This document shows positions 35,637-61,711 of a DNA stretch of 64,000 nt, one piece after another. Location of the stretch: contig NIVC01000592.1 in assembly GCA_002269645.1 (NCBI GenBank), positions 62,001 to 126,000 of the forward strand. Direction: 5' to 3'. Source of the stretch: Macrostomum lignano (taxonomy: Eukaryota). Below the pieces are notes generated by a model. It saw only the letters and a list, made by a program, of their open reading frames with translations, was not told the origin of the DNA and made no database searches. Both the position numbers and the translations under genes were made by a program. How positions within the stretch are numbered: the stretch's first letter is position 1; each line of letters starts with the position of its first letter.

Positions 35637-36129
35637 CTAAAGAAATCGCTGCTGCTTTCAAGCCAATCTGCTCAGGCAAGTTTGACGGTTTCGCTTTAAT
35701 TCTCTCGCCGGTATAAAAGTGTTTTGACTGCAGCCACGGGGCGTTGGCTGAACCTGAGGCGTAAGAAGATTCTAACTGTGTCACTCAATCCCCGCCTTCT
35801 CTGATAACGGCTCAGCCAAGCAGTTCGAGGCAATCACAGGGGAAAGGAACACAGGCAATGATAAGCGAGTTGATAACGCACAAAAGTGAGCTGCACACGG
35901 GCAGCCAACTGCCTTCAAGAATTCGACTCTGTGCGACCGCAGGCTTCGCTTTGGTTGCTCATATCTTCAGCTCTTGAATCTTGAACTTATTAGACTTTTG
36001 AGAAATACTGCCAACCTATTTTGCTTCTGCAGGAGAGCCGGCAGAAGCCTAACATTTTTGTGTCACACCGGCTGCGGGTGATCCGTTGGATGCACCTGAC
36101 ATGCGCCTGTAAGCAGCCAGATGATCCCG

Positions 36130-44830: not shown

Positions 44831-45997
44831 ATCCTCCTTAGAGGCAGAAGAGGCGGCTTCCGCTCTCCTCTGTTTTCCACTTTGCGCCGGCGGAATTCCT
44901 GGAAGCGAGCGATGCTACGGGCCTTCTTCTTAGAGATGTGGAGCCTGCTGCCCTGTGGTCGTGTCATTTCGGTATTATGCTGAGTGCCGGCGGGGCTATT
45001 AGAGTGGGATGCACCAAAAGTTCATAAGTTGCTGCAAAAATCCGCTTGACCAACCGTACCAACCTCGGTTGGCGTTCCAGAATAACGACCGTGAGGTGGC
45101 TTAAGCTCTTACCGACCTATAAGTTTCCTAGTTGGCCGCAAACTAAGAACCTTACATATGATTAATAGTAACTCAAACGACGTATTGTAGAATATGCTTG
45201 GATGTTATTTACCGATCAACCATATAATTATATTTACTACTGCATTTTCAATGTTTGTATTAATAAGTAAATAAGCAAATAAGCGAGCTACAAGCAGGGA
45301 GAATAAGTCTGAGACACTACGGTATAACTAAGCTACTCAAACACTCCTATTAATCTATTATAAATATATATATAAATTACGCCTATCTACTTGGTCTGAG
45401 ACCGATACGCTACTATTCATAAATCTATCGTCATGGCAGTGCTCAGTCTTACCCTCCGGTCACAGGTGTCTGCAGAAGCGGTCGTCGTGATTTAGAAACT
45501 ATTAAGCAATCCAAAAGTTAATACAAGGCGTGTAAAAGAGAGTGAAAAGAGAGTGAGAAAAGGTAAAGTTTTAGACATTTAACCCCTCGCTTATTTATAG
45601 TAAATTTCCCCGATGAAGTCCCTGTGAAACTGTCTGCGTTATCATTTCTCACGTCTTCCAGCCACCGCGCAATTCCGGCCGATTCTCACGGTTCCCCTTT
45701 CTCGTGCGATTTCTGAAATGCCTCTGTTAAAAATGTAATTGAACCCCGCCCCACATAAAGGCATACAAGCCCTCTAAAGTGGAAGCAGACTTTTAGGGCG
45801 GCCTGCACTCGCCCTTTGCAATGCCGTCATCAAGCACTTGTGGCTTTTTGTAAGAGTGCAGCTGTCCACAACTGCTACACTCCACCACGCTCTGATAACA
45901 ATGCAATTCCCTAATTTTCGAAATCCTAAGTCCTATTCCTAATAGTTCCTACGATAGTCCCTAAATGTCGGTTGATTACCATCCTTATATTACGACC

Positions 45998-46735
45998 CTA
46001 CCACTAGCAACCGAGAAGCTCCCCGCTAGGAGCCCAGCCAGAGGCCGAACCAATGGTCCATCAGCACGGTGCTTCCCACCGGGCTCTTGAGAGAGACGAG
46101 GAGGCTGCCTACGGAGCCTGCGGACTTGCCGCATACCAAGCAAAGTATTGTGTAACCAAGGCTTGAAGTTTTCCAGTTGAGTTGAACAGTAAAGTGCTAG
46201 GTGCGTACAGTTGCTTTATTTATATTTTTGTTATTTAAGAAAAACTACATGATCGATATTTTAACTACACTAGAAAAACTGCACGATCGATAAATTCAAG
46301 AGCTAGAGATATCACGTGATTAATAATACATTATACAGATAATTTATCAACTACTCTACTTAAAGTGGCAGTATAAGTAATAGACAATAATAATAATATA
46401 GGTAGCATTTACGTTATAGTAGAAATATTCGTAAAATATTATCTATCATTAAGTTGGTCTGTCAGGTTACACGACACAACGCTAAGGTCAGAGGGTAGAA
46501 TCTGTTTCTAAGAGCCGCAGCTCTGAAGAACACGGCCAAGTCAAAAGCCAAGGCCACGGATAGATTGCCGCCGCCGGACCCCTGTCCTACAACTGCCTGA
46601 ACACGTGCGAGGGACGCGAACCCTTGGGTCGGCTTGTGAGTCAGTTTGGAACCCAAGCCCAAACTTCTCCGGCTATTGGGTGCAGTTGTGTAGCATCGCA
46701 GAAGCCTATCCACAACCCCCTAGCAACTAGTATCC
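45998..46735 (-). mobile_element. Fragment of the R1-like element 5' UTR, interrupted by an AT-rich insert
   Basis: CCAGAGGCCGAAC, GGAGCCTGCGGACT and AAGCCAAGGCCACGGAT are the reverse complement of blocks in 43131-43540. Confidence 0.7.
46151..46471. mobile_element. Possible solo LTR or MITE (TGTAACC...GGTTACA termini)
   Basis: 7-bp terminal inverted repeat with TG..CA ends that interrupts the R1-like UTR. No clear TSD. Confidence 0.35.
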
Positions 46736-47373
46736 GCTTCTTTCTTCGATTGGCGGATTTCATCAAAGCAAAGTTGATCTCTCTTAAATTAATCTCCTAC
46801 CTCAGTCCCGTGTCTTCCGTTATTTTTTGTGCCATCTCTAGCACTACCATCTGTTATAATGTACATAATGTACAATGCTCTTCTGTCAGATTTGCGTCCA
46901 AAAACAATCTTATACCGTCAGTCATATCGACAGAATTAAGTCTCATTGTTACACCTGCAGACAACTGGAGTTTGAGCGGACTCGATTTTCGGATGTTGTC
47001 TGCGTGGATTTCACTCCATCCATGGCCTGTTAATATCCAGACCACTGATGCCCATTATAGCAAATTGTAAGCAAATGATGGTTGAAATGGAAGATGTCTT
47101 GCTGTCTTGTGTCTGCTTGCCTTACAGAGATTAAATAACCACTGATAAAAAACTTATTCTCAGAATATTGTAAGCAAAACATTTTATTATTGTCTTCAGT
47201 TAGTCATTATATTTTGAAAAATGCACCGAAGTGCTACAAGAAAGTCAGTCTGACTAAAATATCTACTTTGAATTTCTCAATTGTTGCTTCAGTTATGAAA
47301 TCCAGCTCAGTTTGATGTCGAACTCAGCAGGCGCCGCAGACCAAAAGGGTCAAATTCAATTAGCAATTCAGTT

Positions 47374-48699
47374 TCACACCTGCAGCATCATCTGCATCGC
47401 ACGGAGGGCCTTCCAGCTTCCAATGCAATACGAGGCCATGTAGGAGGCACCGGTCGTCAGCGTGGTTGAGTACACACCGTTCGGGTTGAACCTCATCCAG
47501 CGGCCCCACCAGAAGCCGCCGCTCCCATATTTGGTGCTGCAGCTGTAAGAAGCAGCATCGTTGTCCCTGTCGAAGGTGGAGAACTGCTGGCCTCGATGGT
47601 GAAACAAAAAGTCGCAGCTGATGGTGGAGTTGGAGCTGAGGAAGCTGCCGAAGTTCATCCTGTAGTTCGTGCTGGAGTCTCCGACGGAAAAGCCGAGATA
47701 CGTGAACGCGTAGAACTCTCCCGCGAAGGTCTGGGCCTCGACTCTCAAGTTTCTCGAGCTGGTCGCAGTCACATTGTGGATATTTTCAAGACCTGCAATT
47801 TTCGTTGTCACGAAATTGCACGGTTCGAATGAAGAATTTCACCAAGCAGGTAATGCCTTGCATTTGGCACTGAAGATACTCACCAGCCCAGAACTCCGTG
47901 GCATCTCCGAAGCCGCTGACGTAGTCATCCCAGTTCCTGTTGAAGGCAATTTGACCCGTCTGTCTCTGCTGGAACACCCAGAATGTCCGGCCGCCGATCC
48001 GCTGCCGGTATCCGTGACTCATGACGGGAAAAACTGGAGGGGTGAACGGAGTGCGCGTTGGTCGCATGAGTGCGAGCTGTTAGTGCAGTGGCAGTGCTGA
48101 GTTGGTAAACTTTATCGATTGTGTCAACTGCTGGTTTAAATGACTTTCTGGTTCAACTTCAATTTTGTAATGCTCTCGGACATACGCATTATGCATAGCT
48201 ATGGGGAGTGTGTGAGGAATTTGTGAAGAGTGTGTAAGAAGTGTATCTGAAGTGCATGGACAGTGCATGGACATGGACAGCTTGATTGAAATTCACAGTG
48301 CCTAAAGTAGTGACCCTTCTAAAGCAATAGTAGAACTGAATTAGCAATAAGTGTTCACCAGTATTCTTGCGCTTCTACTGCACGGTCGCAGCACCGGATG
48401 CGGTGTAACAAGCACTGTGGGACAGGACGCAGACTCCGTTGATGAAGCTGTAGGAGAGGCTGTCGCCGGCCTGAGCGCATTTCACTGCGCACTCGACGTC
48501 GCTGCGAGCGCTCACGGTGACTGAGCTCGCATTGCAGGAGGCGGACGCGGTGACTGCGTCGAACTCGAAGGCTGTTTGAGAGAGGAGGGTTGAGCAGAGG
48601 ATGAGCTAGGACTCAACTATTCCTAGATATTCCAGGAAACTTACCCTGCTCAGCTGCAAGAGCTGCAGCGAACTGAGCAACGAGAAGCAGAGTGAGCAT
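47374..48699 (-). pseudogene. PAN/apple-like + fibrinogen-related domain gene, copy 1 (nonsense codon in exon 2); exons 48645-48699, 48359-48571, 47884-48033, 47374-47792
   Basis: Same 4-exon, all phase-1 structure as copies 2 and 3. TAG at 48377-48375 where copy 3 has TGG. The conserved WWxxC Cys is replaced by Trp (WWGRW). Confidence 0.85.
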
Positions 48700-48778
48700 G
48701 CTTTTGAGCTGCTTGCAGAGCTGATGAGGATTCTGCAGATCTCGAGCCGGTCTCAGGCCGCCGCTTTCGATGTGGCCG

Positions 48779-48819
48779 CTAAATAGCCCTGCCGTGTTTG
48801 CCGCTCCGCTCCTAGCAAC
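48779..48819 (-). promoter_or_regulatory. Conserved proximal promoter of FReD copy 1 (GTTGCTAGG X-box-like half site and TATTTAG TATA-like box); same at 52724-52765 and 61793-61833
   Basis: The block GCGTTGCTAGGAGCGGAGCG..CACGGCAGGGCTATTTAGCGG is retained 80-130 nt upstream of all three ATGs while flanks diverge. Confidence 0.5.
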
Positions 48820-50409
48820 GCAGCGGCAACCGTAGCGCACGACTGTACAGGTAGAACCTGAGTTTCTCCCTGCTCCCGACTATGATTGACTATTTTTTTT
48901 ATTGAGACCGGGAATAAACTCGCTCTGCTGACACTTCAGCTCAAGATTCCATCTAGTAAAAGGAAGGCAGCGTTTTTTAAACGTTGTGATTTTCGCAATA
49001 CTGCAACTCTATGTGTCTTTAGTTAACCATCAATCAACACAGCTTTGAGTAGTGGTTGTGTCAACAAGGCCGCACTAACGTATTTCGTCTTGTCTTCAGA
49101 TTCGAACTGAAGTCCAGGACCAGTTTCTGAGTTCTTACTGACTGTCAGCCGGTCTTAACCGCTGCTTCAGGACGTCACCTATTTTTGCTCACACTGTGAG
49201 AGAGTTGCTATCACATTCTTTTCTTGCTAGTCTTTAGTAGGCAATGCCTTATCATGCCCTGTTGCGCGGTACAGCGACTCAAATTTTATAATTACCATAC
49301 CTAAATGCAGCAAATGGAGCGCAAAACGCAGGCACAGACTTAAAATTGCAAGTCAACAACAATGATAAAACGGTATGAACTCCCAACTGGCTTTGTTCCC
49401 TGCTTGTTGCTGTCGGAGTCCGCTACAGAGTCCGAAAATGAAGGCTTTCTGCAGTACATCTGCAGTACGTGAGCAGAAAGATTATAAAGTTAAGATTTCT
49501 TGTTAGATTTGCATTTGGCTGAAGGTGTACACAATTGGCTGCAGAACCAAGTCAATGAAATCTCTCTCTTCCTCTCTTCTTAAACCCTAAAACCCTCTCC
49601 TTCTCTGTACAACTACATCGGGTGAGTGCAGTCTTGGCAAGTCTTGGCAGTTGAAAAGCACAAAATCCGCACCAAACAGGTGAGTAAAGCAAAGCCCACC
49701 TGCTCGTCTGGGTTTGTCAACAGACAGAAAAGAAAAACATGACTTTGTATGTATAAAATTTATTCAAGAACAAAGCGGTGTTTCTGTGGTAAATGATTTG
49801 TTCTTTTGGGCATCTTATTCATTTTTTAAATAAGCCTGCCCCACCCCACCTCTGGGCCTGCCCAATCCCGCCTTCGGGCCTCCCCATCGCTGATTGGTCT
49901 CAAATAGTCTCAAGACAGCTGATGCGGGGATAAGGAGTCAATGGGAGAAAATGATCCCTCTTTTCTCATCCCTTGCTTCCCTTCTGTCCACTGTTTTCCC
50001 TCTGCGTCACCATCACTATTCTGTCAGCCGTTGCTATTCAACAAGCTGGCTTCCCTTTTACTAACCCAGCCTCTCTCAGCCCATGCGAGGCTTACTTGGG
50101 TAGGAATTCAACAGACAGATGATTTTGTATCAAAAGTCGCAGTGAGTTGAGGCGGACAGAGGACTGCGCGCCCGGCCTGCAGAGCGGGCTGTCCGATGCC
50201 CAAATTATTTATGACTGCTTGACAATGCATTTAATGCATAATACGAGCGTATTGAGCATTATATATTATAGCTGAATGATGCCAGGCTGTATGAGAGGCT
50301 GTTAGGAGGGCGATAAACAGCTGAAAAATATCGTGTGGAAAAGTGACGGACTTGCTGGCATGCGAATCTCAATCCCTGTGTGATTATCTTTGACCAGTCT
50401 GTCAACTGA

Positions 50410-50792
50410 TGATGATGCGTATGATGATTATGATTATGATTATGATTATGATTATGATTATGATTATGATTATGATTATGATTATGATTATGATTATGAT
50501 TATGATTATGATTATGATTATGATTATGATTATGATTATGATTATGATTATGATTATGATTATGATTATGATTATGATTATGATTATTATGATGATTATG
50601 ATTATGTTTATGATTATTATAATTATGATTATGGTTATGATTATGATATGATTATGATTATGATTATGATTATGATTATGATTATGATTATGATTATGAT
50701 TGTGATTATGATTATGATTATGATTATGATTATGATTATTATGATTATGATTATGATTATGGTTATGATTATGATTATGATTATGATTATTA
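50410..50792. repeat. (GATTAT)n microsatellite
   Basis: Direct reading. Confidence 0.97.
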
Positions 50793-51388
50793 TGTCTCTC
50801 TGGAGCCGTTAACGCCAGGAGCCATTGACTGTTGCACCTCGACGACCCCTGGTTCGATTTCGCAACACCTCATAGCTACGCTTTGCCAATCTTTGTGTCA
50901 GACTGCACAGAATTCATAACTGAAAACACCAGGACGAAATGCAGAAACAAACTTTTATTGGTTTACTTCGTTGGGACAAAAGCGCATTTTCAGTAAAACA
51001 CAGTAACAGAATAGAACAGGTGATGCTGATCTCACTTTATTAACTATGCTCATAAAATTTTGAGTTATTATCAATAGAAAACAAATAGAATCGGAATGCA
51101 GCTTGAATGTGATGATTTTAGCTGGCATAGCAAGGTACAGAAAGGCATACTCACGCAAAGGAAATTTCTAGACATCTAAAGTAATGAATATTAACATACA
51201 TTGTGCCTAAATAAAAATTCATAAATATTTTAAACCTTGCGGCTGAGCTTGGAACCGGATAATTAAAACAGATAGTCGCAATTTGAATTTTTCAAGTTTA
51301 ATAAAATTAAAAAAACACGCAATGCTGACTAGTAGTCACTGATAACTTTGTTTTCAATAAAGTTTCTAAAGAATTTGCCTATGAGAAT

Positions 51389-52634
51389 TCACACCTGCAG
51401 CATCATCTGCATCGTGCGGGGGGTCTCGTAGCTCCTAATGCAATTCGAGGATATGAAGGAGTGACCGAACGTCAGCGTGGCTGAGTACACACCGTTCGGG
51501 TTGGAGTTCATGCAGCCGCCCCACCAGTAGCCGCCGCTCCCAAACTGGGTGCTGCAGCTGGTGGAATAAGCGTCGTTGTCCCTGTCGAAGGTGGAGAACT
51601 GATGGCCTCGAGCTTCCGACAAGAAGTCGCAGTCGATGGTAGAGTTGGCGCTGAGGAAGCTGCCGTAGTTCATCGTGTAGTTCGTGCTGGAGCCTCCGAC
51701 GGTGAAGCTGAGCCACTCGAACGCGTATAATTGTCCGTCGAAGGTCTGGGCCTCGACTCGCAGGTTTCGAGGGTTGGTCCCAGTCATATTGTGGATGTTA
51801 TCGAGTCCTGCAATTTGAATTGTCAAAACTTGCAGATTCGCCAAGTTGAACAAACAAAGACATTGTTTTACACCCAGCACATGGGATGCTCACCAGCCCA
51901 GAACTCCGTGGCATTCCCGAAGCCGCTGACGTATTCATCCCAGCTCTTGTTGAAGGCGATTTGACCCGTCTGTCTCTGCTGGAACACCCAGAATGTCCGG
52001 CCGCCGATCTGCCGCTGGTATCCGGCCGAAACATCTGAAGTGGTTGGTGCAGTGAGCTTTTTTTTCTTCTCAACTTGCAGCTATTGGGCAACAAGAAGCA
52101 AAAGTGTTTAGTCGGAAAAGTTTTAATCTAAGTTTGATTTTGCAGATTTTTTCAGCTTTAAGAGTAGCGATGCAGGGTCTGCGTGCTCTCAAGCTTCAGA
52201 AAGAGTCCACGACTTGACTTGATGTCAGTCGAGTCAAGTCATCAGTCGCTGCCCCTGTTTGCAGGCGAAAAAATAACCTGAAATATTCACCCGGTCCCAC
52301 GCGTTTCTTCCGGTACACGGTTGCAGCACCGGATGCGGCGCAGTCGGCCCTGTTGGACAGGACACAGACTCCGTTGATGAAGCTGTAGGAGAGGCGGTCT
52401 CCGGCCTGAGCGCATTTCACAGCGCACTCGACGTCGCTGCGAGCGCTCACGGTGACTGAGCTCGCATTGCAGGAGGCGGTCGCGGTGACTGCGTCGAACT
52501 CGAAGGCTGTTTGAGAGAGGAGGGTTGAGCAGAGGAGAAGCTAGGACTCAACTATTCCTAGATATTCCAGGAAACTTACCCTGCTCAGCTGCAAGAGCTG
52601 CAGCGAACTGAGCAACGAGAAGCAGAGTGAGCAT
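51389..52634 (-). CDS. Secreted PAN/apple-like + fibrinogen-related (FReD) protein, copy 2, 276 aa; exons 52580-52634, 52291-52506, 51894-52034, 51389-51807
   Basis: Signal peptide MLTLLLVAQFAAALA. PAN-like SARSDVECAVKC..SYSFINGVCVLS. FReD motifs FQQRQTGQIAFNKSWDEYVSGFG..EFWAGLDNIH, LRVE, FSTFDRDND..C..GGYWWGGC..NPNGVY. Open frame with phase-1 GT-AG introns. Confidence 0.9.
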
Positions 52635-53609
52635 GCTTTTGAGTTGCTTGCAGAGCTGATAAGGATTCTGCAGATCTCGGGCCGGTCTCGGGCTGGGCTG
52701 GGGCCGCCGCTCCCGCTGTAGCCGCTAAATAGCCCTGCCGTGTTTGTCGCTCCGCTCCTAGCAACGCAGCGGCAGCCATCTCAGTCTGAGCGCCATCACT
52801 TCATACAGGCTATAATGGCTTTTCATTCCTGCTCATCGGAATTGAATTTTTAAACCAACTGGGAAAGGACTAGGAGCCCCTTGAGTCCTACAGTCATGCG
52901 TTGGTTTGTGACTGGTTTTGACTAGTCTCAAACCAGTTTTAAACCCATTTCATTTGCACTGCCAAGTGTCGCCTTGCCTCTCTGTCCGCTTTGTGGGGGT
53001 GGTTGCCTGGTGGGGTGGGCTTTAGCCTCTGTGTCGTCGCCCTTTTATTTGCGTCTCGCTCTGTTTACTCAGCGTTTTTGGGTGCCTGAGTGAGCTCAAA
53101 AAGGTTGCTTCCACGCACCCCCTTTCGTGCCAATTCTGCTCTTGAATCTTCTTTAGGGTTAATACTCTCATAAATGTGCAGCTGCTGACCGCTGATTGGT
53201 CAGATAAAGCACTGGAGAGATAGCTCGTACCATCTCTCCTCTCTCACCCTGTCCCGTTGTCTCCTAGTACTACTTGTCCCCATCTCCCCTTTATCCTCTT
53301 CTCTCCTATCTTCTCGGGGTCAACTGGTACAGTGACTGCTGTCATAATTTCACAATACATAACTGGCTTCTAGTTTTTACGGAGTATCGATTTCGTAACA
53401 ATCGATAAATAACCGATTTCGATTGCTAAAGAATAGAGAAAAACTACTTAGCTGGGATCCACTGTCCGCAATAACGCAGCAAGCCATGACGCATCCAACC
53501 GACAAGTCCACAGTTGATGGACATCAAGGACTGCAGTTAAAGCAATCGGCAAGCACAAGAAAGTTTGCGACAAACTGAATTCATGCTGGGATTTTTCAAT
53601 TACCAGTTT

Positions 53610-53925
53610 AACCTGCTATTCGAAAGTCAAGATATGCCAGGTGTATCAATGCCAAGGGAAAATGCCTTAATGTGGGGTTTTGAAGCTGCATCTTCTATTT
53701 CCGAGTGCTCCGTGAGGCCCGATGACAGCAACGGTGACAGTGATAAGTGAAGAGGACCCTCTTTGAGGTTAATTATTGAGTCGATTCCAAATTCGATGGC
53801 TAGCGCCTCCCTGCTCAAACTCAGGTCTTGGATTTGGCCTCCCGCTCTGGAATAAAACCGGCTAGCGCACTGGCCGAAGCTTCTCTAGCTCCCGATGGTT
53901 GAGACTTTCAGCCAACAGGCCATGG
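53610..53925 (+). repeat. Unidentified dispersed repeat, copy 2 (of 44496-44830)
   Basis: See copy 1. Confidence 0.85.
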
Positions 53926-54739
53926 GCTTGCCTTGCTGCCTAGCTGACACACAGCCCTTCCCACTACCCTCATCACAGCCTACTACCTCACTGCAGGCTT
54001 GCCTTCCTTCACAGCTACCCTCATCGCAACCTATACTGCATCATCGCACGGGCCCAGCCGGTCAGAGAGACAAGCTTTGCAGGAGCCTGAGCCTCAAACA
54101 GGCTCAGGCGGGATCAGACGGGCTCAAATCCAGCTTAAAGTCCTTCAAGCGACTGCCGAATACTTTGTTTTTCTATCATTGTAAATTTTGCCAGAAGTAC
54201 ACCGAACGTAAGTAGATGTATATAATTGATCAATCTAACGATATACAACTTCAACACTCTACCGACCAATCAAGGGCAGCCCTATAAACAGCTAGTTAGG
54301 GGGGCGAAGAATTTGATGTTCACGAGCAGGAGTCACGTGACCGATGCAATGCACAGAATAAGCAGAAACAATCTCATATTCTAGGAGGACTGCTGCAAAC
54401 TCGAGGGAGGTCATCGAATCCACCGATGAAGAACTGCTGGCAGCTGCAATTACCGACGACATATGGACAGCCTGATCTGCATCGGCAACGATATTGACAG
54501 GTTCATCTATTTTCAAGGGCAGTATCTGACACCTACTATGACCTGTCTGATGGGCAAGGGCCGCCTCCCTACTGACCAGACAGACAATGCACTGAAAGCA
54601 TCACTGACTCAGCGATGAGGCTTCACCGCTCATTCCGCTGACCCCTGGCGACCATGGGAGATCCGGTGGTGCCGGTGTCCGCAGCGCGGTCCCCCTCCGG
54701 AGAGTCCAGGTGGTGGATGGTCGCCCGCTAGGTAGTCGA

Positions 54740-55130
54740 ATAACTGGGCCATGAATTGAGTGAAATCCAAACAGACAGCATCCGAAAATTGAGTCTGCTC
54801 AAACTTTAAGTTCTGGTGTGACAATGAACCTTGACTCATCCGACATGACGGATAAATTATATATGAATGTTTTCGAACGCGAATCTGACAGGAAGAGTAC
54901 AAATTCGGGCTATATGTTCATTGTAACAGATATTATATAGTATTATGACATAATATTATATTATTACATTTTAGTATGGAGATTCACAAAAGGATTAGCA
55001 AAAGACACGGGACATAGATGGCAGGTTAAAAAAGAGAGAGATAAAATTAGACTCCGGTTTTATCAACTTTGCCATAAAAAATCTACCAAGCAAAGAAAGA
55101 AGCGGATACTGGTTGCCTGGGGGTTGTGGA
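54740..55130 (+). repeat. Inverted copy of the FReD 3'-flank block (46705-47030; 57055-57130 plus 57920-58085)
   Basis: Reverse complement contains CAGATTCGCGTTCGAAAACAT, TTTCGGATGYTGTCTGTTTGGATTTCACTC and TCCACAACCCCC..GCAACCAGTATYCGCTTCTTTCTT. Confidence 0.85.
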
Positions 55131-55310
55131 TTCATCATCATCATCATCATCATCATCATTATAATAATAATCATCATCATCATCACCACCACCATCAACA
55201 TCACCACCATCATCATCATTATAATAATCATCATCATCTAAATCACCACCATCATCATCATTATAATCATCATCATCTAAATCACCACTACCACCATCAT
55301 CATCATCTTT
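55131..55310. repeat. (CAT)n-type microsatellite
   Basis: Direct reading. The poly-His ORF is spurious. Confidence 0.95.
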
Positions 55311-55544
55311 TCAGGACTGACTGAAAGCAATAAGGGAAGCAAGGGATGAGAAAAAGAGGGAGAATTTTCTCCCGTTAGTAGTTGTCAGGAGGAGGCTTTC
55401 AGGACAGAATTTTTCACAGCCTCCACAATCCCACTAATTCTCCCAAATTATCTCCCAGGTTATCCCAAATTCGTGTCAGAGGCAGGAAGGCGCAGACTGG
55501 AAAGAGTTGCGCTAAAGCAAAAAGCAACTAACAAAGCAGTGTAA

Positions 55545-55930
55545 AGCCTAAAACAGAGTCAGAGGAGCGAAGGTAGACAGTAGCTGGTGAGCTGAGCTGT
55601 TGCCGCAAACACTTGATGAAGCGGAAAGTCGAATCGCTTTGCCAATTCCCCCTAGTGACATGACTTCTGGCACCGATGCTCCGGGGCCATTGAAAAAAGT
55701 GGCACTGCCCTGTGCAGCGAATGTCCTGAGATCGCTGCTCCACGGTCGAAACCTGCCGCTTGAGTCAGCTGCCTCGCTAACCAGATCGGATCGATAACAG
55801 AAACCAGGAACCGGGAAGGCGTGGCGTCCAGCCCTGGTGGTGGCATTCAGAAAACTGAATGGTCTTGCTGGGCCCGATCCGCACCTCCATTCCATCTTCT
55901 TCTTCTCCGAAGAAGTCTTTCGACCAGTTG
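55545..55930 (-). mobile_element. C-terminal half of a DIRS-type tyrosine recombinase (frameshifted relic)
   Basis: Across three frames: GMEVRIGPSKTIQFSE..PRLPGS / QAAGFDRGAAISGHSLHR / SATFF..GASVPEVMSLGG / WQSDSTFRFI, matching the SKT..GHSxRxGxAT..GxWxSD pattern. Confidence 0.75.
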
Positions 55931-56081
55931 ATGCCCATCCAGTCCGACGTGGTCGATTGAGAAATCTGTGACCAATGATGGCTTTGCCGGCTTGGGCTGG
56001 GGTTCACAGGTCTGCATGCAGTCCCCTCATCGTGCATAAGAACTGCCCTAAGGTCAGCTGTCTTGACTTACTTGACTTGGT

Positions 56082-56335
56082 TGCATTCGACGCTTGAAGG
56101 CCCTCCGTGCGATGCGGATGCTGCTGCAGGTGTGATGCCGCTTCATTAACTTTTTGACCATTGCTGAGTTCGATATCAACCTGAGACAAATTTCATAACT
56201 GAAACAATAATTGAGAAAGTCAAAGTAGACATTTTTAGCTAGACTGACTCTTCTGGTAGCGCTTCAGTATTTGTCAAAATAAAATAAATGAAGACAATGA
56301 TAGAATGTTTTGCTTACAATATTTTGAAAGTAAAG
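56082..56335 (+). pseudogene. Inverted FReD relic: last 17 codons plus 3' flank
   Basis: 56082-56135 reads CIRRLKALRAMRMLLQV* versus CIGSYKALRAMQMMLQV* in copy 3. 56160-56330 is the reverse complement homolog of 58261-58432 and 47160-47330. Confidence 0.88.
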
Positions 56336-56364
56336 TTTTCAATATTTTTTATACTTTGTACGAG

Positions 56365-57085
56365 CCGAGGTACTCGTCGGTGAGCCTGTCCTGAGTAAAG
56401 GCGGGGCATTCACAGATGAAGTGCTCCGTATTCTCAACACCGGAGGAGAGGCAGAATGGGCATTCCTCACTGCGCCAACTCATTGCTGGGGTGGCCAGAG
56501 TGCTCAAGGATCGACCTTAGAGAATTACTGACCTTACTGACCCCAGCTTGGAAAGATGGACCGTCCAGATCCAAAGGGACGAAGTGAATGTTTTAAACAC
56601 TCCATTATATGTCGCTAAAAGGCGAATGGATACTAAGGTGAGAGGCTGCTGGGCCATAACCCCAAACTCAACAGCCAGCCATAAGATTGCAAACGGGGTT
56701 GGCCTAAGCCCTTAACGGCCCTACCGCTAGCGAACGAGAAACTACCCGAATAAGAGTTCAGCCAGAGACCGAGCCAACGGTCCATCAGCGCGGTGCTACG
56801 CTGGGCCCTTGAGACAGACAGGGAGGCTGTCTCCGGAGCCTGTGGACTGGCCGCATACCATGTTACGTTCGGAGGGGAAAACCAGGCCAAGTCAAAAGCC
56901 AAAGCCATGGATGGGTTGCCGCCGCCGGAGCCAGTCAGTCCAGCAGCTTTAGTGCTACCTTGACAACATGCGGGACGCGAACTTCTGGGTCAGACTGTGA
57001 GTCAGCTTAGAGAAACTTCTCCGGCCATTCCTACACCGTAACAGAGGGGGTCCTATCCACAACCCCCTAGCAACCAGTATTCGCT
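56365..57085 (-). mobile_element. Internally deleted derivative of the R1-like element (5' UTR and ORF1 start joined to the ORF2 C-terminal CCHC finger)
   Basis: 56580-57060 is the reverse-complement homolog of 43137-43680, including ATG GAG. 56365-56490 encodes CPFCLSSGVENTEHFICECPAFTQDR, the CCHC end of a non-LTR ORF2. Confidence 0.7.
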
Positions 57086-57629
57086 TCTTTCTTAGCTTTC
57101 TTACCGAATTTTATCGTCGCAAAGTTGATAGAATCTGAGTTTAATGTTATCTCATGTCTTTGTTGCCTTTTCTGCTCCGTCCGTGCGGACCGCAAATGGG
57201 ATAACGGGATAACGGGATCCGAGGGAGATGCGGATGAGGAGGCTGTGAGCAGGTAGCCACTCAGCAGCAGCAGAGGTGAGCACGGGTCTGGAGGCGTACA
57301 GACACTTCGCAGACCCGAAGGAAGACGGTGGCGAGAGAAGTGGATAATGGAGACGGGACAAATTAACGAAAGCGAACACTGTCTTACCGGGCGGGGTCAC
57401 TTGTCGCGCTCATGCAGGCGTGGCCTCTAATATTTTATTCTGCTCAACCAATGGTGTAGTTTCGCAAGCACAACGTTCGTAGTGGTAGAGAGAGAGGAGC
57501 GCGGGGAGAGCCGGGCGAGGGCCGCGCGCGCACATAAATACTGGGTGAGCACTGAGCAGGGGACTGGGCGGGCAGTTGACTGCCAGCCTTCGAGCTGGTC
57601 CATCCAGTAGGGACAGGCGGCAGAAGGTT

Positions 57630-57745
57630 GGCATCAAGAGCTACAACTGCTGGGCCACATCGCCAGGCGGTGCCTGAAGGCGATCGGCAGTAGTTGCAGC
57701 CGGTGCTCAGGCAAGGGCCACACCGCAGCAGTGCCCGCCACCTGC
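57630..57745 (+). mobile_element. Gag-like double CCHC zinc-knuckle relic
   Basis: YNC/LGHIARRC and CSRCSGKGHTAAV(C)P with small indels, inside a ~700-bp insert absent from the paralogous flank at 46790-46830. Confidence 0.6.
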
Positions 57746-58477
57746 TGGCCAGCCGCAGGGAAATTCATTCAATTCTCATTCACGGTTTGATAAGGCACGC
57801 ACCAAAAAGTTAGTCTGTGTTCTGGAATTTCGTCTGCCTGTGTTGCTTCGTTTCAGCAAAGCAAAAATGTCTGGGGAGGGTATTCCCACTGCCAACTGTT
57901 CTATTGTACATGTAGCCCCCTCTTCTTGCCAGATTCGCGTTCGAAAACATATGTAACTTATATAATTTATCAGTCATATCGACAGAATTTAGGCTCATTA
58001 TTACACCAGACTTCAAGAGTTTGAGCGGCCTCGACTTTCGGATGTTGTCTGTTTGGATTTCACTCCACGCGTGGCCTGGTAATTTCCAGGCCATTTCAAT
58101 GCCCATCATAAAAAAATTATAGGCGAAAGATGGTTGAAATGAAAGACGACTTGTGTCCGCTTGCCTTACAGAGACCATGAGAAGATTACCACTGTATATA
58201 ATTATATACAGTAGTCATTGACCATGAGTACCACGAATGAAAAATCTTGAAAAAAATTTTCTCAAAATATTGCAAGAGAAACATTCTATCGTTGTCTTCA
58301 GTTGTTTTATTTTTTTTAAATGCACCGAAGCGCTACCAGAAGAGCCAGTCTGACTGAAATGTTTACTTTGACTTTCTCAATTATTGTTTCAGTTATGAAA
58401 TTCGTCTCTGGTTAATGTCGAACTCAGCAATGCGCCACAGACCGGAAAGGTTAAATAAGTTAGTTAACGAAGCAGCT

Positions 58478-61400
58478 TCACACCTGCAGCATCATCTGCA
58501 TCGCACGGAGGGCCTTGTAGCTTCCAATGCATCTCGAGGCCATGTAGGAGGCACCTGGCTTTAGCGTGGTTGAGTACACACCGTTCGGGTTGATCCTCAA
58601 GCAGCTGCTCCACCAGAAGCCGCCGCTCCCGTAGTTGGTGCTGCAGCTGTAAGGAGCAGCTTCGTTGTCCCTGTCGAAGGTGGAGAACTGCTGGCCTCGA
58701 TGGTGAGACAAAAAGTCGCAGTTGATGGTGGAGTTGACCCTCATGAAGCTGCTGTAGTTCATCCTGTAGTTCGTGCTGGAGTCTCCGACGGTGAAGTCGA
58801 GAAATTCGAACGCATAGAACCCTCCGTCGAAAGTCAGAGCCTCGACTCGTAGGTTTCTCTGGCTGGTCGCAGTCACATTGTGGATATTTTCAAGACCTGA
58901 AATTTGCGTTGTCACGAACTTGCACGGTTTGAATGAAGACTTCAATAAACAGGTAATGTCTTGCATTCGGCGCTGAAGATACTCACCAGCCCAGAACTCC
59001 GTGGCATTCCCAAAGCCGCTGACGTAGTCATCCCAGTTCCTGTTGAAGGCGATTTGACCCGTCTGTCTCTGCTGGAACACCCAGAATGTCCGGCCGCCGA
59101 TCCGCTGCCAGTATCCGGGACTCATGACGGGAAAAACTGGAGGGGTGAACGGAGTGCGAATTGGTCACCATGAGCGTGAATTGTTAGTTTAATGGCAGTA
59201 CTGAGTTGATTGTATCAACAACTGGTTTAAATGACTTTCCGTTCAACTTAATTTGCCTTGGTTTGCTCTGAGAAAACCAGCTTTAGTACCCCGGGGGGGG
59301 CTAGTTTTGCTGGTTTGTGCGTGCTCGAGGTTTGCGTGGGGTTGTACTTTGTGTCGTTTTCTACCCTCCTGTGTGCAGCGGCCCTCCCCCCGCCTGCTGA
59401 GGGTTTTTTGCCCCGGTTCGTAGGACCTCCTGCGTTCCGGTCCTCGTTAACCTTTAGTCAATTGATTTGCTGAATCATGTCTGACTCTGTTAAGGTCCTA
59501 CGTGAGAGGCTACAAGGTCTAGGCCAACGCATGACAACAAGGGTGAACTGATAGAACGCTTCTCTCGTATCTCAGCATAGTCAAACATTGGCCTCTGAAC
59601 TGCAAAGTGAAGAAGCGGAGGCATCTGACCAGTACGAGAGCGGGCGAGATCGACGGTTTAAAAAGGGAACGAGGTGGCCGAGCTTCCGAGCGACGCGGGA
59701 GTAGCGGCGGCAACCGGAGGCCCTGGGTCTGGCGTGGCTGGCGGCCTGGTGGACATACTGCGAGAGACGCCGCCGCTACTCCGATGACTGATCTCGTGAC
59801 TCGCCTGGGCTTTACTTTCAACTGGGGTAAGTGTCAGCGGCCCTCTTAGCGTATGTCCTTCTTGGGTGTCGAAACCGTCAAATGAGAAGGTGGAGAAGCT
59901 TGTCTGTCTGCTAGAGTTGGAAGCGGGAAAAATTAGAATTAGTTGTTGCAGCATGTCATTGGTAAGCTCGGTTAGGCGGCGCAGGTTTATCTGCTCTGGG
60001 CGTACGTTCATGCGGGAGTTGATCGAGTGTTGTAATGCTCTTAAGCCAGTGCAGCGGATCAAAATCGATGAGCGGCTGCGGAGCCTTTTTCAGTGGTAGA
60101 CAGTCTCGTTGAAGTCATGTGGTGGTCGAATTGTGGCCCTGGTACGTGAATGATGTAGCCATCGAGTCGGATGCTTGCGGATGCCTAATGGTTGCTGGGA
60201 CTGGTGCTATGTGGACTGGTTGATAGATGCGGACTCGGCGTTTGTAGAGCTGCCTATCAACTACAAGGAAGCGGTGGCACCGCTGCTGGGTGTCATTCGC
60301 TGGAGGGAGCAGCCCAATGAATCCTGGATCAGCATCTATTGCGACAACCAAGCCGCCTACCACGTTATCAACAAAGGTTTTCAAAGTTTTCAAACTACAG
60401 CGGCTGCTGCAGACGGTGGCGCGCATGTGCCTGCGCTATTGCATGAGTGTTCGTGCCTTCCACGTGGCGGGCGAGTTCCAGATTTTGCGGATGCGGCTTC
60501 TAGGCTGCATGAGCCTAGCGAGTTGTTAAACTTTTTACTCCGTTGTCATGGTTCTGTGTACCAGTGGACACTGGCGACCCTGCACATGCATGCTTTCTGT
60601 CCGTCGCCTCCCTTCATTTACCGGCCGCCAAGCTGCGTCGGACCCTCTCAGCCATCGCGCCGCCTCGCTGCTGAGCGCCTCGTATGCGCCATCATCAAGG
60701 AGAGCCATCAACAGAAACCTCCTGGAGTGGCGTGAGTTCTGCCTGCGATCTGGTTGGGACTCGGTCCACTGCCCTGTGGTAGCATTGCTCAACTATCTGG
60801 CTGACCTTGTGGGCACCCGGATGCGTTCCTTCAGTGGTGTTTCCTCTTTGACCAGCCCCTGTCGCTGTGGTTCCGAGTCAACTCTGCGCCAGACCTGACC
60901 AAGCATGCTGCCACAGCACTGCTTCTACGTGGCGCCAAGCGCGAGTTGGGACTGCGAGCTACCAAAAAGCGGCTGGTATCTCCCTTCGTGCTGGTGGAGC
61001 TGCATTACCAAGTCGACGGGGCCCTGTTTTAATTTTTTAATTTTTCTTTTTTCTCCCCCTTTTTCTCCTCGTCTTGCCTTTGGAGGCTGTTGCTTCGCCT
61101 CTGTGTTCCTCTGTATTCTCGTGGTGTTCCTTTCAGACTGGGTACTACGAGTAATGCGTATTCTCACGGATTTAGGTTTTTTGCATGGCTAGGAGTATGG
61201 GCAGTAGTAGTATATGGGAAGTGTGTGGGAAGCGTGTCTGGAGTGTGTAAGGAGTGTATATGGGCAGTGGGCAGTACATCCTGATTGCATTTTAAAATTT
61301 CAAAATTACAAACACTTCGAAAACAATTTGAAGTTCGCTAATACTAAAACCGAATTAGCAATAAATATTCACCAGTATTCTTGCGTTTCCACTGCACTGT

Positions 61401-61711
61401 CCCAGCACCGGATGCGGCGCAGTCGGCACTGTTGGAAAGGACGCAGACTCCGTTGATGAAGCGGAACGAGAGCCAGACGCTGGACTGAAGGCTTTTAATC
61501 GCACAGTCAGTTTCGCTGCGAGCGCTCACGGTGACCGAGCTGGCAGCAGCGCACGAGGCAGTGGCGGTGACTGCGTCGAACTCGAAGGCTTCTTGAGAAA
61601 GAAAGAGTTGGGCAGAGGAGGAGCTAGGATATTCCTAGATATTCCAACAAACTTACCCTGATTAGCTGCAAGAGCTGCAGCGAACTGAGCAACGAGAAGC
61701 ACAGTGAGCAT
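58478..61711 (-). CDS. Secreted PAN/apple-like + FReD protein, copy 3, 279 aa; exons 61657-61711, 61373-61588, 58987-59136, 58478-58896
   Basis: Open frame across four phase-1 exons. Exon 2 uses an AAG acceptor. Intron 2 is enlarged by a DIRS relic. Confidence 0.85.
59275..61180 (+). mobile_element. DIRS/Ngaro-type tyrosine-recombinase retrotransposon relic, antisense in intron 2 of FReD copy 3
   Basis: RT end LVTRLGFTFNWGKCQRPS*..FLGVE and GRTFMRELI. DIRS RNase H PINYKEAVA..IYCDNQAAYHVINKG. YR N-half AASLLSASYAPSSRR..WREFC..LLLRGAKRELG. Flanks align with the uninterrupted intron 2 of copy 1. Confidence 0.88.

What the first reader, a model, noticed from the sequence alone, without database searches (positions are those of the whole stretch)
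47374..61711. Birth-and-death cluster of secreted PAN/apple-like + N-truncated fibrinogen-domain proteins
Three 4-exon genes encode signal peptide, a Cys-reduced PAN-like module and a FReD lacking the usual N-terminal DC..YCDM..GGW segment (EFWAG replaces EFWLG). Differences appear concentrated around the Ca/ligand-binding P subdomain: NDAASYSCSTKY..WWGRWMRF, NDAYSTSCSTQF..WWGGCMNS and NEAAPYSCSTNY..WWSSCLRI. Invertebrate FReDs (ficolins, tachylectin-5, snail FREPs) are pattern-recognition lectins. Duplication, conversion, decay and transposon load here look like a fast-diversifying immune or mucus lectin locus. This is the best candidate for an undescribed system in the window.
Basis: partly seen in the sequence, partly recalled or inferred. 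Interest (0 to 1): 0.72.

Follow-up and report, generated by a model that had tools for sequence, protein, structure and literature searches.

The report
Flatworm PAN-like fibrinogen lectin gene cluster
The region holds three tandem copies (two intact, one dead) of a Macrostomum lignano flatworm gene for a small secreted protein that joins a probably apple-like module to a shortened fibrinogen-type domain; this is a lineage-specific variant of a very common invertebrate family and is of modest interest.

Summary
Window 47374-61711 (minus strand) carries three tandem paralogues, each with four exons, GT-AG splice sites and phase-1 introns. Each encodes a signal peptide, a roughly 70-aa Cys-containing module and a fibrinogen-related domain (FReD). 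The FReD scores Pfam Fibrinogen_C E about 1e-32 to 1e-35 but matches only from profile position about 40 of 221, so the N-terminal A-subdomain segment and its disulfide are missing.

Gene A is a pseudogene: it has an in-frame TAG in exon 2 and has lost a P-domain cysteine. B and C are intact. A is a mosaic, B-like at its 5' end and C-like at its 3' end. The source is Macrostomum lignano. Public databases already list these proteins as uncharacterised "fibrinogen C-terminal domain-containing" proteins.

A divergent paralogue (PAA91134.1) encodes the module and the FReD start in one exon, so the architecture is real. The PAN/apple assignment is plausible but unproven. Sequence evidence is sub-threshold. 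One AlphaFold model (pLDDT 72.5) has PAN topology, and its top Foldseek hits are almost all PAN or PAN-like domains at weak E-values.

dN/dS is about 1.3 in the P subdomain and about 0.4 elsewhere, but raw amino-acid variability is no higher there. The known family is small. Lectin or immune function is inferred only. Verdict: a new variant of a known kind, interest about 0.3.

The parts
47374..48699 (-). Copy A, a pseudogene. Exons 48699-48645, 48571-48359, 48033-47884, 47792-47374. In-frame TAG at 48377-48375. The P-domain Cys is replaced by Trp at 47499-47497.
   Evidence: model and translation; public model P0017 ends at the same stop; mosaic, with exon 1 100% and intron 1 97% identical to B, and exon 3 96%, intron 3 88% and exon 4 89% identical to C.
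51389..52634 (-). Copy B, intact, 276 aa. Exons 52634-52580 (signal peptide), 52506-52291 (module), 52034-51894 (FReD start, ends ...EFWA|G), 51807-51389 (rest of FReD plus stop).
   Evidence: Pfam Fibrinogen_C 1.6e-32, residues 103-251 against profile 41-193/221. The AF2 model matches ficolins with TM 0.67-0.71 normalised to the target.
58478..61711 (-). Copy C, intact, 279 aa. Exons 61711-61657, 61588-61373, 59136-58987, 58896-58478. Intron 2 is 2236 nt.
   Evidence: Exons 3-4 equal UniRef A0A1I8GLA5 (P0002) apart from one residue. Pfam Fibrinogen_C 5.3e-35.
52291..52506 (-). Exon-2 module of B (equivalents 48359-48571 in A and 61373-61588 in C). About 70 aa, probably PAN/apple-like. Cys31, Cys46 and Cys66 are invariant across all five modules (B numbering). 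Cys74 is kept in B, C and P0012, displaced in A and absent in the L002 copy. Cys50 completes a helix C-x3-C in A, B and the L002 copy only.
   Evidence: Alignments. AF2 of the module alone gives pLDDT 72.5 and b-b-a-b-b-b topology. Foldseek top hits are HGF N domain, plasminogen PAp, FXI apple and SML-2. hhalign against a PAN profile scores 17.7, with 3 of 200 shuffles reaching that score. Pfam PAN_1 scores 15.3 and 13.2 bits, below the 21.4 cut-off.
59255..61330 (.). Insert of about 2.1 kb in intron 2 of C, absent from A and B. Possibly a decayed mobile element; unclassified.
   Evidence: A/C homology is interrupted here. Its ORFs have no Pfam hit and it has no terminal repeats.
56081..56361 (+). 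Inverted relic of a copy's 3' end: the last ~17 codons (...KALRAMRMLLQV*) plus about 230 nt of 3' flank.
   Evidence: tblastn, blastn 76-78% to the 3' ends of A and C, translation.
45992..47373 (-). 3' flank of A, duplicated together with the gene. It is homologous in patches to 56715-58477, downstream of C.
   Evidence: Self-blastn: 46842-48165 matches 57887-59254 (80%), 45992-46138 matches 56715-56860, and 46534-46778 matches 56885-57129.

Best explanation
This is a lineage-specific tandem cluster in the flatworm Macrostomum lignano. It encodes small (about 260 aa mature) secreted, N-glycosylated two-module proteins. The N-terminal module of about 70 aa most likely has a PAN/apple-type fold: one canonical core disulfide (helix to strand 4) is kept and the other is lost. 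This module is fused directly to a fibrinogen-related domain that has lost the N-terminal half of its A subdomain and that subdomain's disulfide. The FReD keeps the B and P subdomains, the FSTFDRDND calcium motif and the P-domain disulfide.

The likely role is extracellular binding of a glycan or other surface ligand through the P subdomain, as in ficolins and tachylectin-5. The PAN-like module would supply a second binding or self-association surface in place of a collagen or coiled-coil stalk.

The cluster evolves by segmental duplication, unequal crossing-over or gene conversion, and pseudogenisation. The scaffold is under purifying selection, and the P-subdomain loops are under relaxed or diversifying selection.

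Shown: gene structures, domain content, pseudogene status of A, mosaicism, conservation of the architecture in a distant paralogue. Inferred: secretion, PAN fold, disulfide pairing, calcium binding, any ligand binding, and any immune or mucus role.
For: - Gene models have consistent GT-AG, phase-1 junctions in all three copies.
- The FReD is well supported. Pfam gives 113-122 bits, starting at profile position 40-41 in B and C. PDB phmmer best hits are tenascin-R and ficolins, starting at chain residue about 43-50. The AF2 FReD part matches H-, M- and L-ficolin at E 1e-14 over about 180 of about 215 columns.
- The source is M. lignano. The public chained model P0017 reproduces the order C, B, A.
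- The module-FReD junction is real. P0012 (PAA91134.1) has the same signal peptide + module + short FReD layout, with residues 19-144 in one exon and the other two introns at the same positions. Intron 2 of A and B is poorly conserved and non-coding.
- PAN-like fold is supported.
- Purifying selection acts on the scaffold: B-C dN/dS is 0.38 in the module and 0.41 in the B subdomain, and the non-P regions pooled depart from neutrality at p=0.003. In the P subdomain it is 1.32.
- Mosaic copy A. A's defects. A second tandem pair with a frameshifted allele.
- Cys in CDFL and Cys in S-x-C-I are both present in A, B, C and P0001 and both absent in P0012 and its neighbour. This fits an extra subfamily-specific disulfide.
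Against: - There is no expression, secretion or binding evidence of any kind.
- No PAN match reaches a curated threshold. B, C and P0012 give no PAN hit at all. A PDB profile search with the module finds no PAN protein. Four of five AF2 module models have pLDDT 48-58, and in the full-length model the module has pLDDT below 50 throughout (block means 23-38). Foldseek E-values are only 0.3-3.
- From my recollection of the TL5A and ficolin pocket, not checked here, the residue after the second P-domain Cys is His in those lectins. Here it is Met or Leu, so acetyl-group binding cannot be assumed.
- There is no collagen, coiled-coil or other obvious oligomerising part, which lectins of this type usually need for avidity.
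- P-subdomain dN/dS is not different from 1 (binomial p=0.72), and amino-acid variability equals that of the B subdomain. Relaxed constraint explains the data as well as diversifying selection does.
- Only about 8-10 distinct family sequences were recovered, all from M. lignano.
Confidence: 0.6

Rival explanations
1. The proteins act in reproduction or self/non-self recognition (egg coat, seminal fluid or sperm-egg interaction) in this outcrossing simultaneous hermaphrodite, not in immunity. Rapid change in the P loops would then reflect sexual conflict or allorecognition, as with the polymorphic FReD protein v-Themis of Ciona.
For: Among the few non-flatworm hits of the family profile is the Ciona 'self-incompatibility-linked fibrinogen-like protein-B'. 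It shares the unusual YW-A-G motif in place of FW-L-G. P-subdomain dN/dS is elevated. Tandem duplication with turnover is typical of reproductive proteins as well as immune ones.
Against: The Ciona hit is weak (36% identity, 76 bits) and ranks below bivalve and insect FReDs. The WAG motif also occurs in an unrelated metagenomic FReD (P0007). There is no expression information. The literature searches returned nothing linking FReDs to Macrostomum reproduction.
Confidence: 0.12
2. The cluster is a decaying or non-lectin family. The FReD serves as an extracellular-matrix or structural protein (like MFAP4, tenascin or angiopoietin-like FReDs) or has no current function. The high P-subdomain dN/dS is then simply loss of constraint on a binding site that is no longer used.
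For: One of three copies is already dead. P-subdomain dN/dS is indistinguishable from 1. Pocket residues are not conserved. The A subdomain is truncated. The best sequence hit in the PDB is tenascin-R, and MFAP4 and ANGPTL are as close structurally as ficolins. The family is small.
Against: B and C keep open frames, all splice sites, the Ca2+ motif, the P-domain disulfide and a covarying extra Cys pair. The module and B subdomain show dN/dS about 0.4. Conserved blocks within the P subdomain (FSTFDRDND, SCST, GSGG-WW, NPNGVY, MQMMLQV) alternate with the variable loops, which is not the pattern of uniform decay.
Confidence: 0.2
3. Exon 2 does not encode a PAN/apple domain. It is either a novel small disulfide module or a strongly diverged remnant of the FReD's own A subdomain, with 'ADCAASGAATVY' corresponding to 'DC..G..SGvY'.
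For: No PAN match is above threshold. The AF2 result rests on one model from a 5-sequence alignment. MAFFT places ADCAASGA-ATVY under the DC...G.Y.I segment of complete FReDs. For copy A the Pfam Fibrinogen_C match reaches back to profile position 14. Some phmmer alignments to angiopoietins reach back to residue about 75.
Against: Those extended alignments do not put Cys on Cys: the spacing from Cys to Trp is 32 residues here against 38 in angiopoietin-1 as I recall its sequence. Three independent weak signals agree on the same PAN register, with the helix ECAxKC on PAN C2/C3 and GVCVL on PAN C5. Apart from two unrelated proteins, the first 26 Foldseek hits are PAN, apple or PAN-like WSC domains. 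The predicted b-b-a-b-b-b order is that of PAN.
Confidence: 0.25

Closest known systems
Ficolins (human H-, M-, L-ficolin recognition domains)
   Same: They are the best structural matches to the FReD part (Foldseek E 1e-14, TM normalised to target 0.67-0.71, 28-31% identity). Both are secreted, and both keep the Ca2+ motif D-x-D-N-D and the P-domain disulfide.
   Different: This family has no collagen-like stalk and no N-terminal A-subdomain segment or its disulfide. It has a PAN-like module instead. The pocket His after the second Cys is Met or Leu. It reads FWAG where ficolins read FWLG. The window subfamily carries an extra Cys pair (CDFL / SxCI).
Tachylectin-5A/5B (horseshoe crab FReD lectins)
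   Same: Small secreted proteins made essentially of one FReD, with no collagen or coiled coil, acting (in TL5) as Ca2+-dependent acetyl-group lectins. This is the nearest analogue in overall size and simplicity (from general knowledge; TL5 was not among the listed hits).
   Different: TL5 has a complete A subdomain, and its short N-terminal Cys-containing segment forms oligomers. Here a folded module of about 70 aa precedes a truncated FReD. Conservation of the pocket residues was not shown.
Snail FREPs and other expanded invertebrate FReD families (mosquito FBNs, bivalve FReDs)
   Same: A lineage-specific FReD family in tandem arrays with duplication, conversion and pseudogenes. A different N-terminal module is fused to the FReD.
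   Different: FREPs carry one or two IgSF domains and a complete FReD, and form large families with somatic diversification. Here the N-module is not IgSF, and the recovered family is small (about 8-10 sequences). No evidence was sought or found for somatic diversification.
PAN/apple domains (HGF N domain, plasminogen PAp, factor XI apple, Sarcocystis SML-2 lectin)
   Same: The predicted b-b-a-b-b-b topology, the S-x-x-E-C-A-x-K-C helix motif and the G-x-C-x-L strand match. The hhalign register puts module Cys on PAN C2, C3 and C5.
   Different: The module is below every curated threshold. The second core disulfide partner (PAN C4) is missing, and C3 is absent in C and P0012. An extra Cys pair (ASC...ADC) sits at non-apple positions. 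I found no described PAN-FReD fusion.
Ciona v-Themis (self-incompatibility-linked fibrinogen-like proteins)
   Same: A secreted FReD protein with variable regions and the W-A-G variant motif. It was retrieved by the family profile.
   Different: It is weakly related (36% identity over 57% of the query), has a complete A subdomain with CDM, and has a different N-terminus. Its role in gamete self-recognition is not testable here.

Membership tests
Fibrinogen-related domain (Pfam PF00147 Fibrinogen_C) | Profile match above the curated gathering score | tested here: met
   113.6, 121.7 and 121.5 bits for B, C and A against a cut-off of 22. P0012 scores 109.8 bits.
Fibrinogen-related domain (Pfam PF00147 Fibrinogen_C) | Complete three-subdomain domain including the N-terminal A-subdomain segment with its Cys pair (DC...CDM) | tested here: not met
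   In B and C the match starts at profile position 40-41 of 221. PDB alignments start at chain residue about 43-50. YCDM is replaced by GYQRQI. Foldseek aligns about 180 of about 215 target columns. No hidden exon exists: the junction lies within one exon in P0012.
Fibrinogen-related domain (Pfam PF00147 Fibrinogen_C) | P-subdomain disulfide (NC...WW..C) and Ca2+ motif D-x-D-N-D | tested here: met
   B and C have FSTFDRDND/E, SCST and WWxxC. A has lost the second Cys (GRW). This is sequence level only.
FReD lectins of the ficolin / tachylectin-5 type | Conserved acetyl-binding pocket residues (His after the second P-domain Cys, flanking Tyr residues) and demonstrated Ca2+-dependent glycan binding | tested here: inconclusive
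   The residue after the Cys is Met or Leu rather than His. An aromatic four residues after the first Cys (F/Y) and the NGVY Tyr are kept. The pocket mapping comes from memory of TL5A and ficolin structures. Binding is not testable with these tools.
Ficolin | Collagen-like Gly-X-Y region N-terminal to the FReD | tested here: not met
   There is no Gly-X-Y run anywhere in the 276-279 aa proteins.
Snail FREP | One or two IgSF domains N-terminal to the FReD | tested here: not met
   No Ig-family Pfam hit even at E up to 10. The module is about 70 aa and contains a predicted helix.
PAN/apple domain (Pfam PF00024 PAN_1 and clan) | Profile match above the gathering score | tested here: not met
   PAN_1 scores 15.3 bits (A) and 13.2 bits (L002 neighbour copy) against a cut-off of 21.4. 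B, C and P0012 give no hit. A module profile against the PDB finds no PAN protein.
PAN/apple domain (Pfam PF00024 PAN_1 and clan) | Five-stranded antiparallel sheet packed against one helix, order b1-b2-a-b3-b4-b5 | tested here: inconclusive
   The best AF2 model of the module (pLDDT 72.5, pTM 0.60) has exactly this order, but the other four models have pLDDT 48-58. Apart from two unrelated proteins, the first 26 Foldseek hits are PAN, apple or PAN-like WSC structures, with probability up to 0.93 and TM 0.5-0.6 normalised to the query, but E is only 0.28-3.
PAN/apple domain (Pfam PF00024 PAN_1 and clan) | Two core disulfides linking the helix to strands 3 and 4 | tested here: inconclusive
   By the hhalign register, Cys46 and Cys66 (B numbering) sit on PAN C2 and C5 and are invariant in all five modules. 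C3 is present in A, B and the L002 copy only. The C4 position is never Cys. Pairing could not be measured because no model coordinates were available.
Birth-and-death multigene cluster | Tandem paralogues with at least one pseudogene, fragments, and evidence of exchange between copies | tested here: met
   Pseudogene A. Mosaic identity pattern. Inverted 3' relic and duplicated flanks. A second locus with a tandem pair, frameshifted by 13 nt of deletion in one assembly contig and intact in the other.
Fast-diversifying immune receptor family | Large family and site-specific omega significantly above 1 | tested here: not met
   Only about 8-10 distinct sequences were recovered from the 5.8-billion and 1.84-billion protein sets. 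P-subdomain dN/dS of 1.3-1.4 is not different from 1 (p=0.72). A genome-wide census of the M. lignano assemblies could not be run.

The most novel reading that the evidence does not exclude
Macrostomid flatworms have built a previously undescribed kind of soluble recognition molecule. In it, a PAN/apple module has structurally replaced the N-terminal half of the fibrinogen-domain A subdomain. The ligand-binding loops are under diversifying selection, maintained by duplication and gene conversion. The molecule would serve as a pattern-recognition or allorecognition (mating or self/non-self) receptor in a phylum whose humoral immunity is almost unknown.
Probability: 0.2. Interest if true: 0.55.

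Novelty: new variant of a known kind. Interest (0 to 1): 0.32.

Why it matters
FReD proteins are among the main soluble recognition molecules of invertebrates, but almost nothing is known about them in free-living flatworms. This family shows an unusual way of building one. The FReD has lost the N-terminal part of its A subdomain and that subdomain's disulfide, and is fused directly to a small, probably PAN/apple-like module. It has no collagen, coiled-coil or Ig stalk. If the proteins bind glycans or microbes, they would give a compact and tractable model of flatworm humoral recognition, because M. lignano supports RNAi, transgenesis and in situ hybridisation. They would also be a case study of domain remodelling within the FReD fold. 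If they do not, the locus is an ordinary example of tandem duplication, gene conversion and gene death in a repeat-rich, recently duplicated genome. One practical point: the public gene models for this locus are wrong. One chains C, B and A into a single 768-aa protein, and another starts C at an internal Met.

Tried and rejected
1. A whole-library HMMER search with the exon-2 profile gave only one true relative, M. lignano P0012. The other five hits are long repetitive proteins matched through Ala/Ser/Thr/Val-rich composition; the one inspected (P0014) was spurious.
2. The word-indexed searches returned few proteins and even missed P0012, although its sequence was in the query alignment. They cannot be used as a census.
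3. A PDB profile search with the module gave a best hit of intimin Ig-like domains at E=0.1, which is chance level. No PAN protein was found.
4. The first hhalign with 4 effective module sequences aligned only 15 columns (P=0.036), which was not informative. With a fifth, divergent module it reached 40 columns in the PAN register, with 3 of 200 shuffles reaching the score.
5. In the AF2 model of full-length B, the module had pLDDT below 50 throughout (block means 23-38), so it was unusable for the module.
6. I tested the idea that 'ADCAASGAATVY' is the FReD's own DC...SGvY segment. Extended phmmer alignments do not place Cys on Cys and the spacing differs, so it is kept only as a minor rival.
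7. Look-ups of contigs encoding P0001, P0002 and P0019 found nothing on record.
8. The 2.1-kb insert in intron 2 of C could not be classified. It has no Pfam hit and no terminal repeats. My impression that it resembles a DIRS-type element is from memory only and is not claimed.
9. Literature searches found no paper on these proteins, on FReDs in Macrostomum, or on a PAN-FReD architecture.

Full report
**What is there.** The window is eukaryotic and very rich in mini- and microsatellites. Between 47374 and 61711, six-frame translation of the minus strand shows three related sets of coding blocks. Reading the DNA gives three genes with the same plan:
- Exon 1 is 55 nt: ATG plus a hydrophobic leader, MLT[LV]LLVAQFAAALAA.
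- Exon 2 is 213-216 nt and encodes a Cys-containing module of about 70 aa.
- Exon 3 is 141-150 nt and runs ...GY.Q.IGGRTFWVFQQRQTGQIAFN..W..YVSGFG.ATEFWA|G.
- Exon 4 is 419 nt and runs LENIHNVT... to ...MQMMLQV*.

All introns are GT-AG and all three junctions are phase 1. Exon coordinates are:
- A: 48699-48645, 48571-48359, 48033-47884, 47792-47374.
- B: 52634-52580, 52506-52291, 52034-51894, 51807-51389.
- C: 61711-61657, 61588-61373, 59136-58987, 58896-58478.

B and C translate to 276 and 279 aa without interruption.

Copy A is a pseudogene. It has an in-frame TAG at 48377-48375, where C has Trp. A 3-nt deletion displaces the last Cys of the module. The second Cys of the P-domain disulfide has become Trp (WWGRW, 47499-47497).

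**Source and public record.** The closest database proteins are all "Fibrinogen C-terminal domain-containing protein" of Macrostomum lignano. P0002 (UniRef A0A1I8GLA5) equals exons 3-4 of C except for one residue. P0017 (A0A1I8H7A6, 768 aa) is a chained model. It runs through the 3' half of C, an intergenic ORF (window 55548-55895), all of B including its 5' leader, and exons 1-2 of A. It ends exactly at A's TAG. The locus is therefore already in public data, mis-modelled and uncharacterised, and A's stop is not an error of this window. P0017's version of B carries an A-type tract in exon 3 (NRNWDDYVSGFGD). That fits exchange between copies, or between haplotypes or subgenomes.

**The fibrinogen-related domain.**
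- Pfam Fibrinogen_C scores 113-122 bits (cut-off 22). In B and C it covers only profile positions about 40-193 of 221.
- phmmer against the PDB gives tenascin-R, ficolins, ANGPTL4 and MFAP4 (E 1e-23 to 1e-19). The alignments begin at GRTFW, opposite chain residue about 43-50.
- The AF2 model of B (10-sequence alignment, mean pLDDT 55; the B subdomain is mostly at 74-90) matches H-, M- and L-ficolin, MFAP4 and tenascins. Foldseek gives E about 1e-14 over about 180 of about 215 target columns, with TM 0.67-0.71 normalised to the target.
- So the FReD is real but lacks the N-terminal part of the A subdomain and its DC...CDM disulfide. GGGW survives as GGRTFW.
- Retained features are FSTFDRDN[DE] (the Ca2+ motif), S-C-S-T...WWxxC (the P disulfide, in B and C) and NPNGVY.
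- From memory of ficolin and TL5A structures, the residue after the second Cys, His in those lectins, is Met or Leu here.
- A Cys in CDFL and a Cys in S-x-C-I occur together in A, B, C and P0001. Both are absent in P0012 and its neighbour. This suggests a subfamily-specific extra disulfide (inference).

**Is the junction real?** A whole-library profile search with exon 2 (1.84 billion representatives) found one genuine relative, P0012 (NCBI PAA91134.1, M. lignano, 283 aa). It is about 46% identical over the N-terminal half and has the same signal peptide + module + short FReD layout. In its genomic locus (L001, NIVC01000094.1), residues 19-144, meaning the module plus the FReD start, lie in a single exon. 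The intron after the signal peptide and the intron after FWA|G sit at the same positions as in the window genes. Intron 2 of A and B is short (325 and 256 nt), poorly conserved and non-coding. No exon for a canonical A subdomain is therefore missing.

**The exon-2 module.** Sequence evidence for PAN/apple is sub-threshold:
- PAN_1 scores 15.3 bits in A and 13.2 bits in a further paralogue (L002 14796-15197), against a cut-off of 21.4.
- B, C and P0012 give nothing.
- A module profile against the PDB finds nothing relevant.

I built a small PAN profile from plasminogen PAp, the HGF N domain and the four factor XI apple domains. hhalign of the five-sequence module alignment against it aligns 40 columns in the expected register. 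ARSDVECAVKCAQAG falls on AGSIEECAAKCEEDE, LSYSF on CRAFQY, and GVCVLS on QQCVIM. The score is 17.7, and 3 of 200 column-shuffled controls reach it.

AF2 on the module alone (5 sequences) gave one model with pLDDT 72.5 and pTM 0.60; the other four had pLDDT 48-58. Its order is strand 3-8, strand 17-21, helix 25-34, strand 40-44, strand 47-51, strand 63-68, which is the PAN order. Apart from two unrelated proteins, the first 26 Foldseek hits are PAN, apple or PAN-like WSC structures: HGF NK1 (probability 0.84-0.93, TM 0.52-0.61 normalised to the query), plasminogen (22% identity), factor XI, SML-2, a fungal copper oxidase and Wsc1. Their E-values are only 0.28-3.

In that register, the invariant Cys46 and Cys66 (B numbering) correspond to the PAN helix-to-strand-4 disulfide. 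The second core pair is incomplete: C3 is present only in A, B and the L002 copy, and C4 is never present. Cys31 is also invariant; Cys74 is kept in B, C and P0012, and the two may form an extra pair. I rate a PAN-like fold at about 70-75%. It is the best reading but is not demonstrated.

**Evolution of the cluster.** Segment-wise identities show that A is a mosaic:

| Segment | A versus B | A versus C |
|---|---|---|
| Exon 1 | 100% | 95% |
| Intron 1 | 97% | 87% |
| Exon 2 | 90% | 81% |
| 3' end of intron 2 | 61% | 82% |
| Exon 3 | 91% | 96% |
| Intron 3 | 69% | 88% |
| Exon 4 | 83% | 89% |

This pattern indicates unequal crossing-over or gene conversion. The A/C duplication extends into the 3' flank (45992-47373 against 56715-58477, in patches). 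C's intron 2 carries an unclassified insert of about 2.1 kb (59255-61330). An inverted relic of a 3' end lies at 56081-56361.

The P0012 locus has its own tandem neighbour about 3 kb downstream. That neighbour is intact in one contig (L002) and frameshifted by two deletions totalling 13 nt in the other (L001). The birth-and-death description is therefore justified.

**Selection.** Nei-Gojobori estimates for the two intact copies, B versus C:

| Region | dN/dS | Substitution counts or dS |
|---|---|---|
| Module | 0.38 | |
| B subdomain | 0.41 | dS 0.41 |
| P subdomain (CDFL to end) | 1.32 | 38.2 nonsynonymous, 7.8 synonymous; dS 0.18 |

Pairs that include A give the same pattern. The P subdomain differs from the rest (Fisher p=0.028) but not from neutrality (p=0.72). 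The rest is under purifying selection (p=0.003). The share of variable amino-acid columns among A, B, C and P0001 is 20% in exon 3, 41% in the B subdomain and 43% in the P subdomain. Within the P subdomain, conserved blocks alternate with variable loops. It does not hold as a raw excess of differences, and relaxed constraint is not excluded.

**Family size.** The two word-indexed searches and the full HMMER search recovered only about 8-10 distinct family sequences, all from M. lignano. They are A, B, C/P0002, P0001, P0003/P0018, P0004 (frameshifted in the module), P0012/P0016 and its neighbour. The more distant P0019 also has a short N-terminus. The index is leaky, since it missed P0012, and the genome assemblies could not be scanned, so this count is a lower bound. 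There is still no sign of a large family.

**Function.** Secretion is inferred from the leader, from 4-6 N-X-S/T sequons and from the Cys content. Ligand binding through the P subdomain is inferred by analogy with ficolins and tachylectin-5. The PAN-like module may add a second binding surface or mediate self-association, as apple domains dimerise factor XI and PAN lectins bind galactose (general knowledge). B has nine Cys, one of which is presumably unpaired. None of this was tested, and the literature searches found nothing on these proteins.

**Verdict.** This is a real and correctly located feature. It is a lineage-specific variant of the FReD family with an unusual architecture, in a small tandem cluster that shows duplication, exchange and decay. 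Interest is modest.

Noticed in passing
window 47374-61711 compared with UniRef A0A1I8H7A6 (P0017) and A0A1I8GLA5 (P0002): Public gene models of this locus are faulty. One 768-aa model chains the 3' half of C, an intergenic ORF, all of B with its 5' leader read as protein, and exons 1-2 of A. Another starts C at an internal Met in exon 3, losing the signal peptide and module.
   Followed up: partly
L001 14250-15690 and L002 14796-16227 (NIVC01000094.1 and NIVC01000338.1): The divergent paralogue P0012/P0016 has a tandem neighbour copy that is unannotated in both fetched loci. Its module reading frame is intact in L002 but disrupted by two deletions (9 + 4 nt) in L001. This is either an allelic or homeologous pseudogene or an assembly error. 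A short duplicate of the start of exon 2 (PEYFDSVPALTCCC) also lies about 600 nt upstream of the annotated gene in L002 (9322-9456).
   Followed up: partly
window 50424-50790: A hexanucleotide microsatellite (ATGATT)n of about 62 copies lies between copies A and B. It reads as long DY or IM repeats in ORF lists.
   Followed up: no
window 62327-63389: A very regular 21-nt minisatellite (about 51 copies, 97% matches) lies just upstream of copy C. It creates 390-400-aa artefactual ORFs on both strands.
   Followed up: no
window 7100-41100 (e.g. 13155-14453, 14882-15802, 30658-32310, 34824-35784, 40318-41063): Most long ORFs in the rest of the window are translations of minisatellite arrays (LSVC, DRQT, NPFT, HSLT repeats). 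This is consistent with a very repeat-rich genome. No convincing additional gene was identified with Pfam.
   Followed up: partly
window 30658-30900 and 27245-27688, minus strand: Two non-repetitive coding-looking stretches. One is hydrophobic and looks like transmembrane segments (MTAGAIAIVKPFTAMSRPLMKDIVFYMFTIFWAF...). The other is acidic and coiled-coil-like. They may be exons of an unrelated gene. Neither has a Pfam hit.
   Followed up: partly
window 46842-47180, 54739-54931, 57887-58180: A short repeated element (translating as ...GH.WSEI..DNIRKS.PLKL...SVDMTD) occurs downstream of A and C and, inverted, between B and C. It is probably a dispersed repeat or MITE-like element and was not classified.
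   Followed up: no
P0006 (Sinanodonta woodiana, ACJMK2_018143): A bivalve protein with a complete FReD has an N-terminal Cys-rich region (…SQCFFKCVHENEICQSLFYNDITRKCQG…) with a PAN-like C-x3-C...C..F.Y...C pattern that Pfam does not call. A PAN-like module fused to an FReD may therefore exist outside flatworms.
   Followed up: partly
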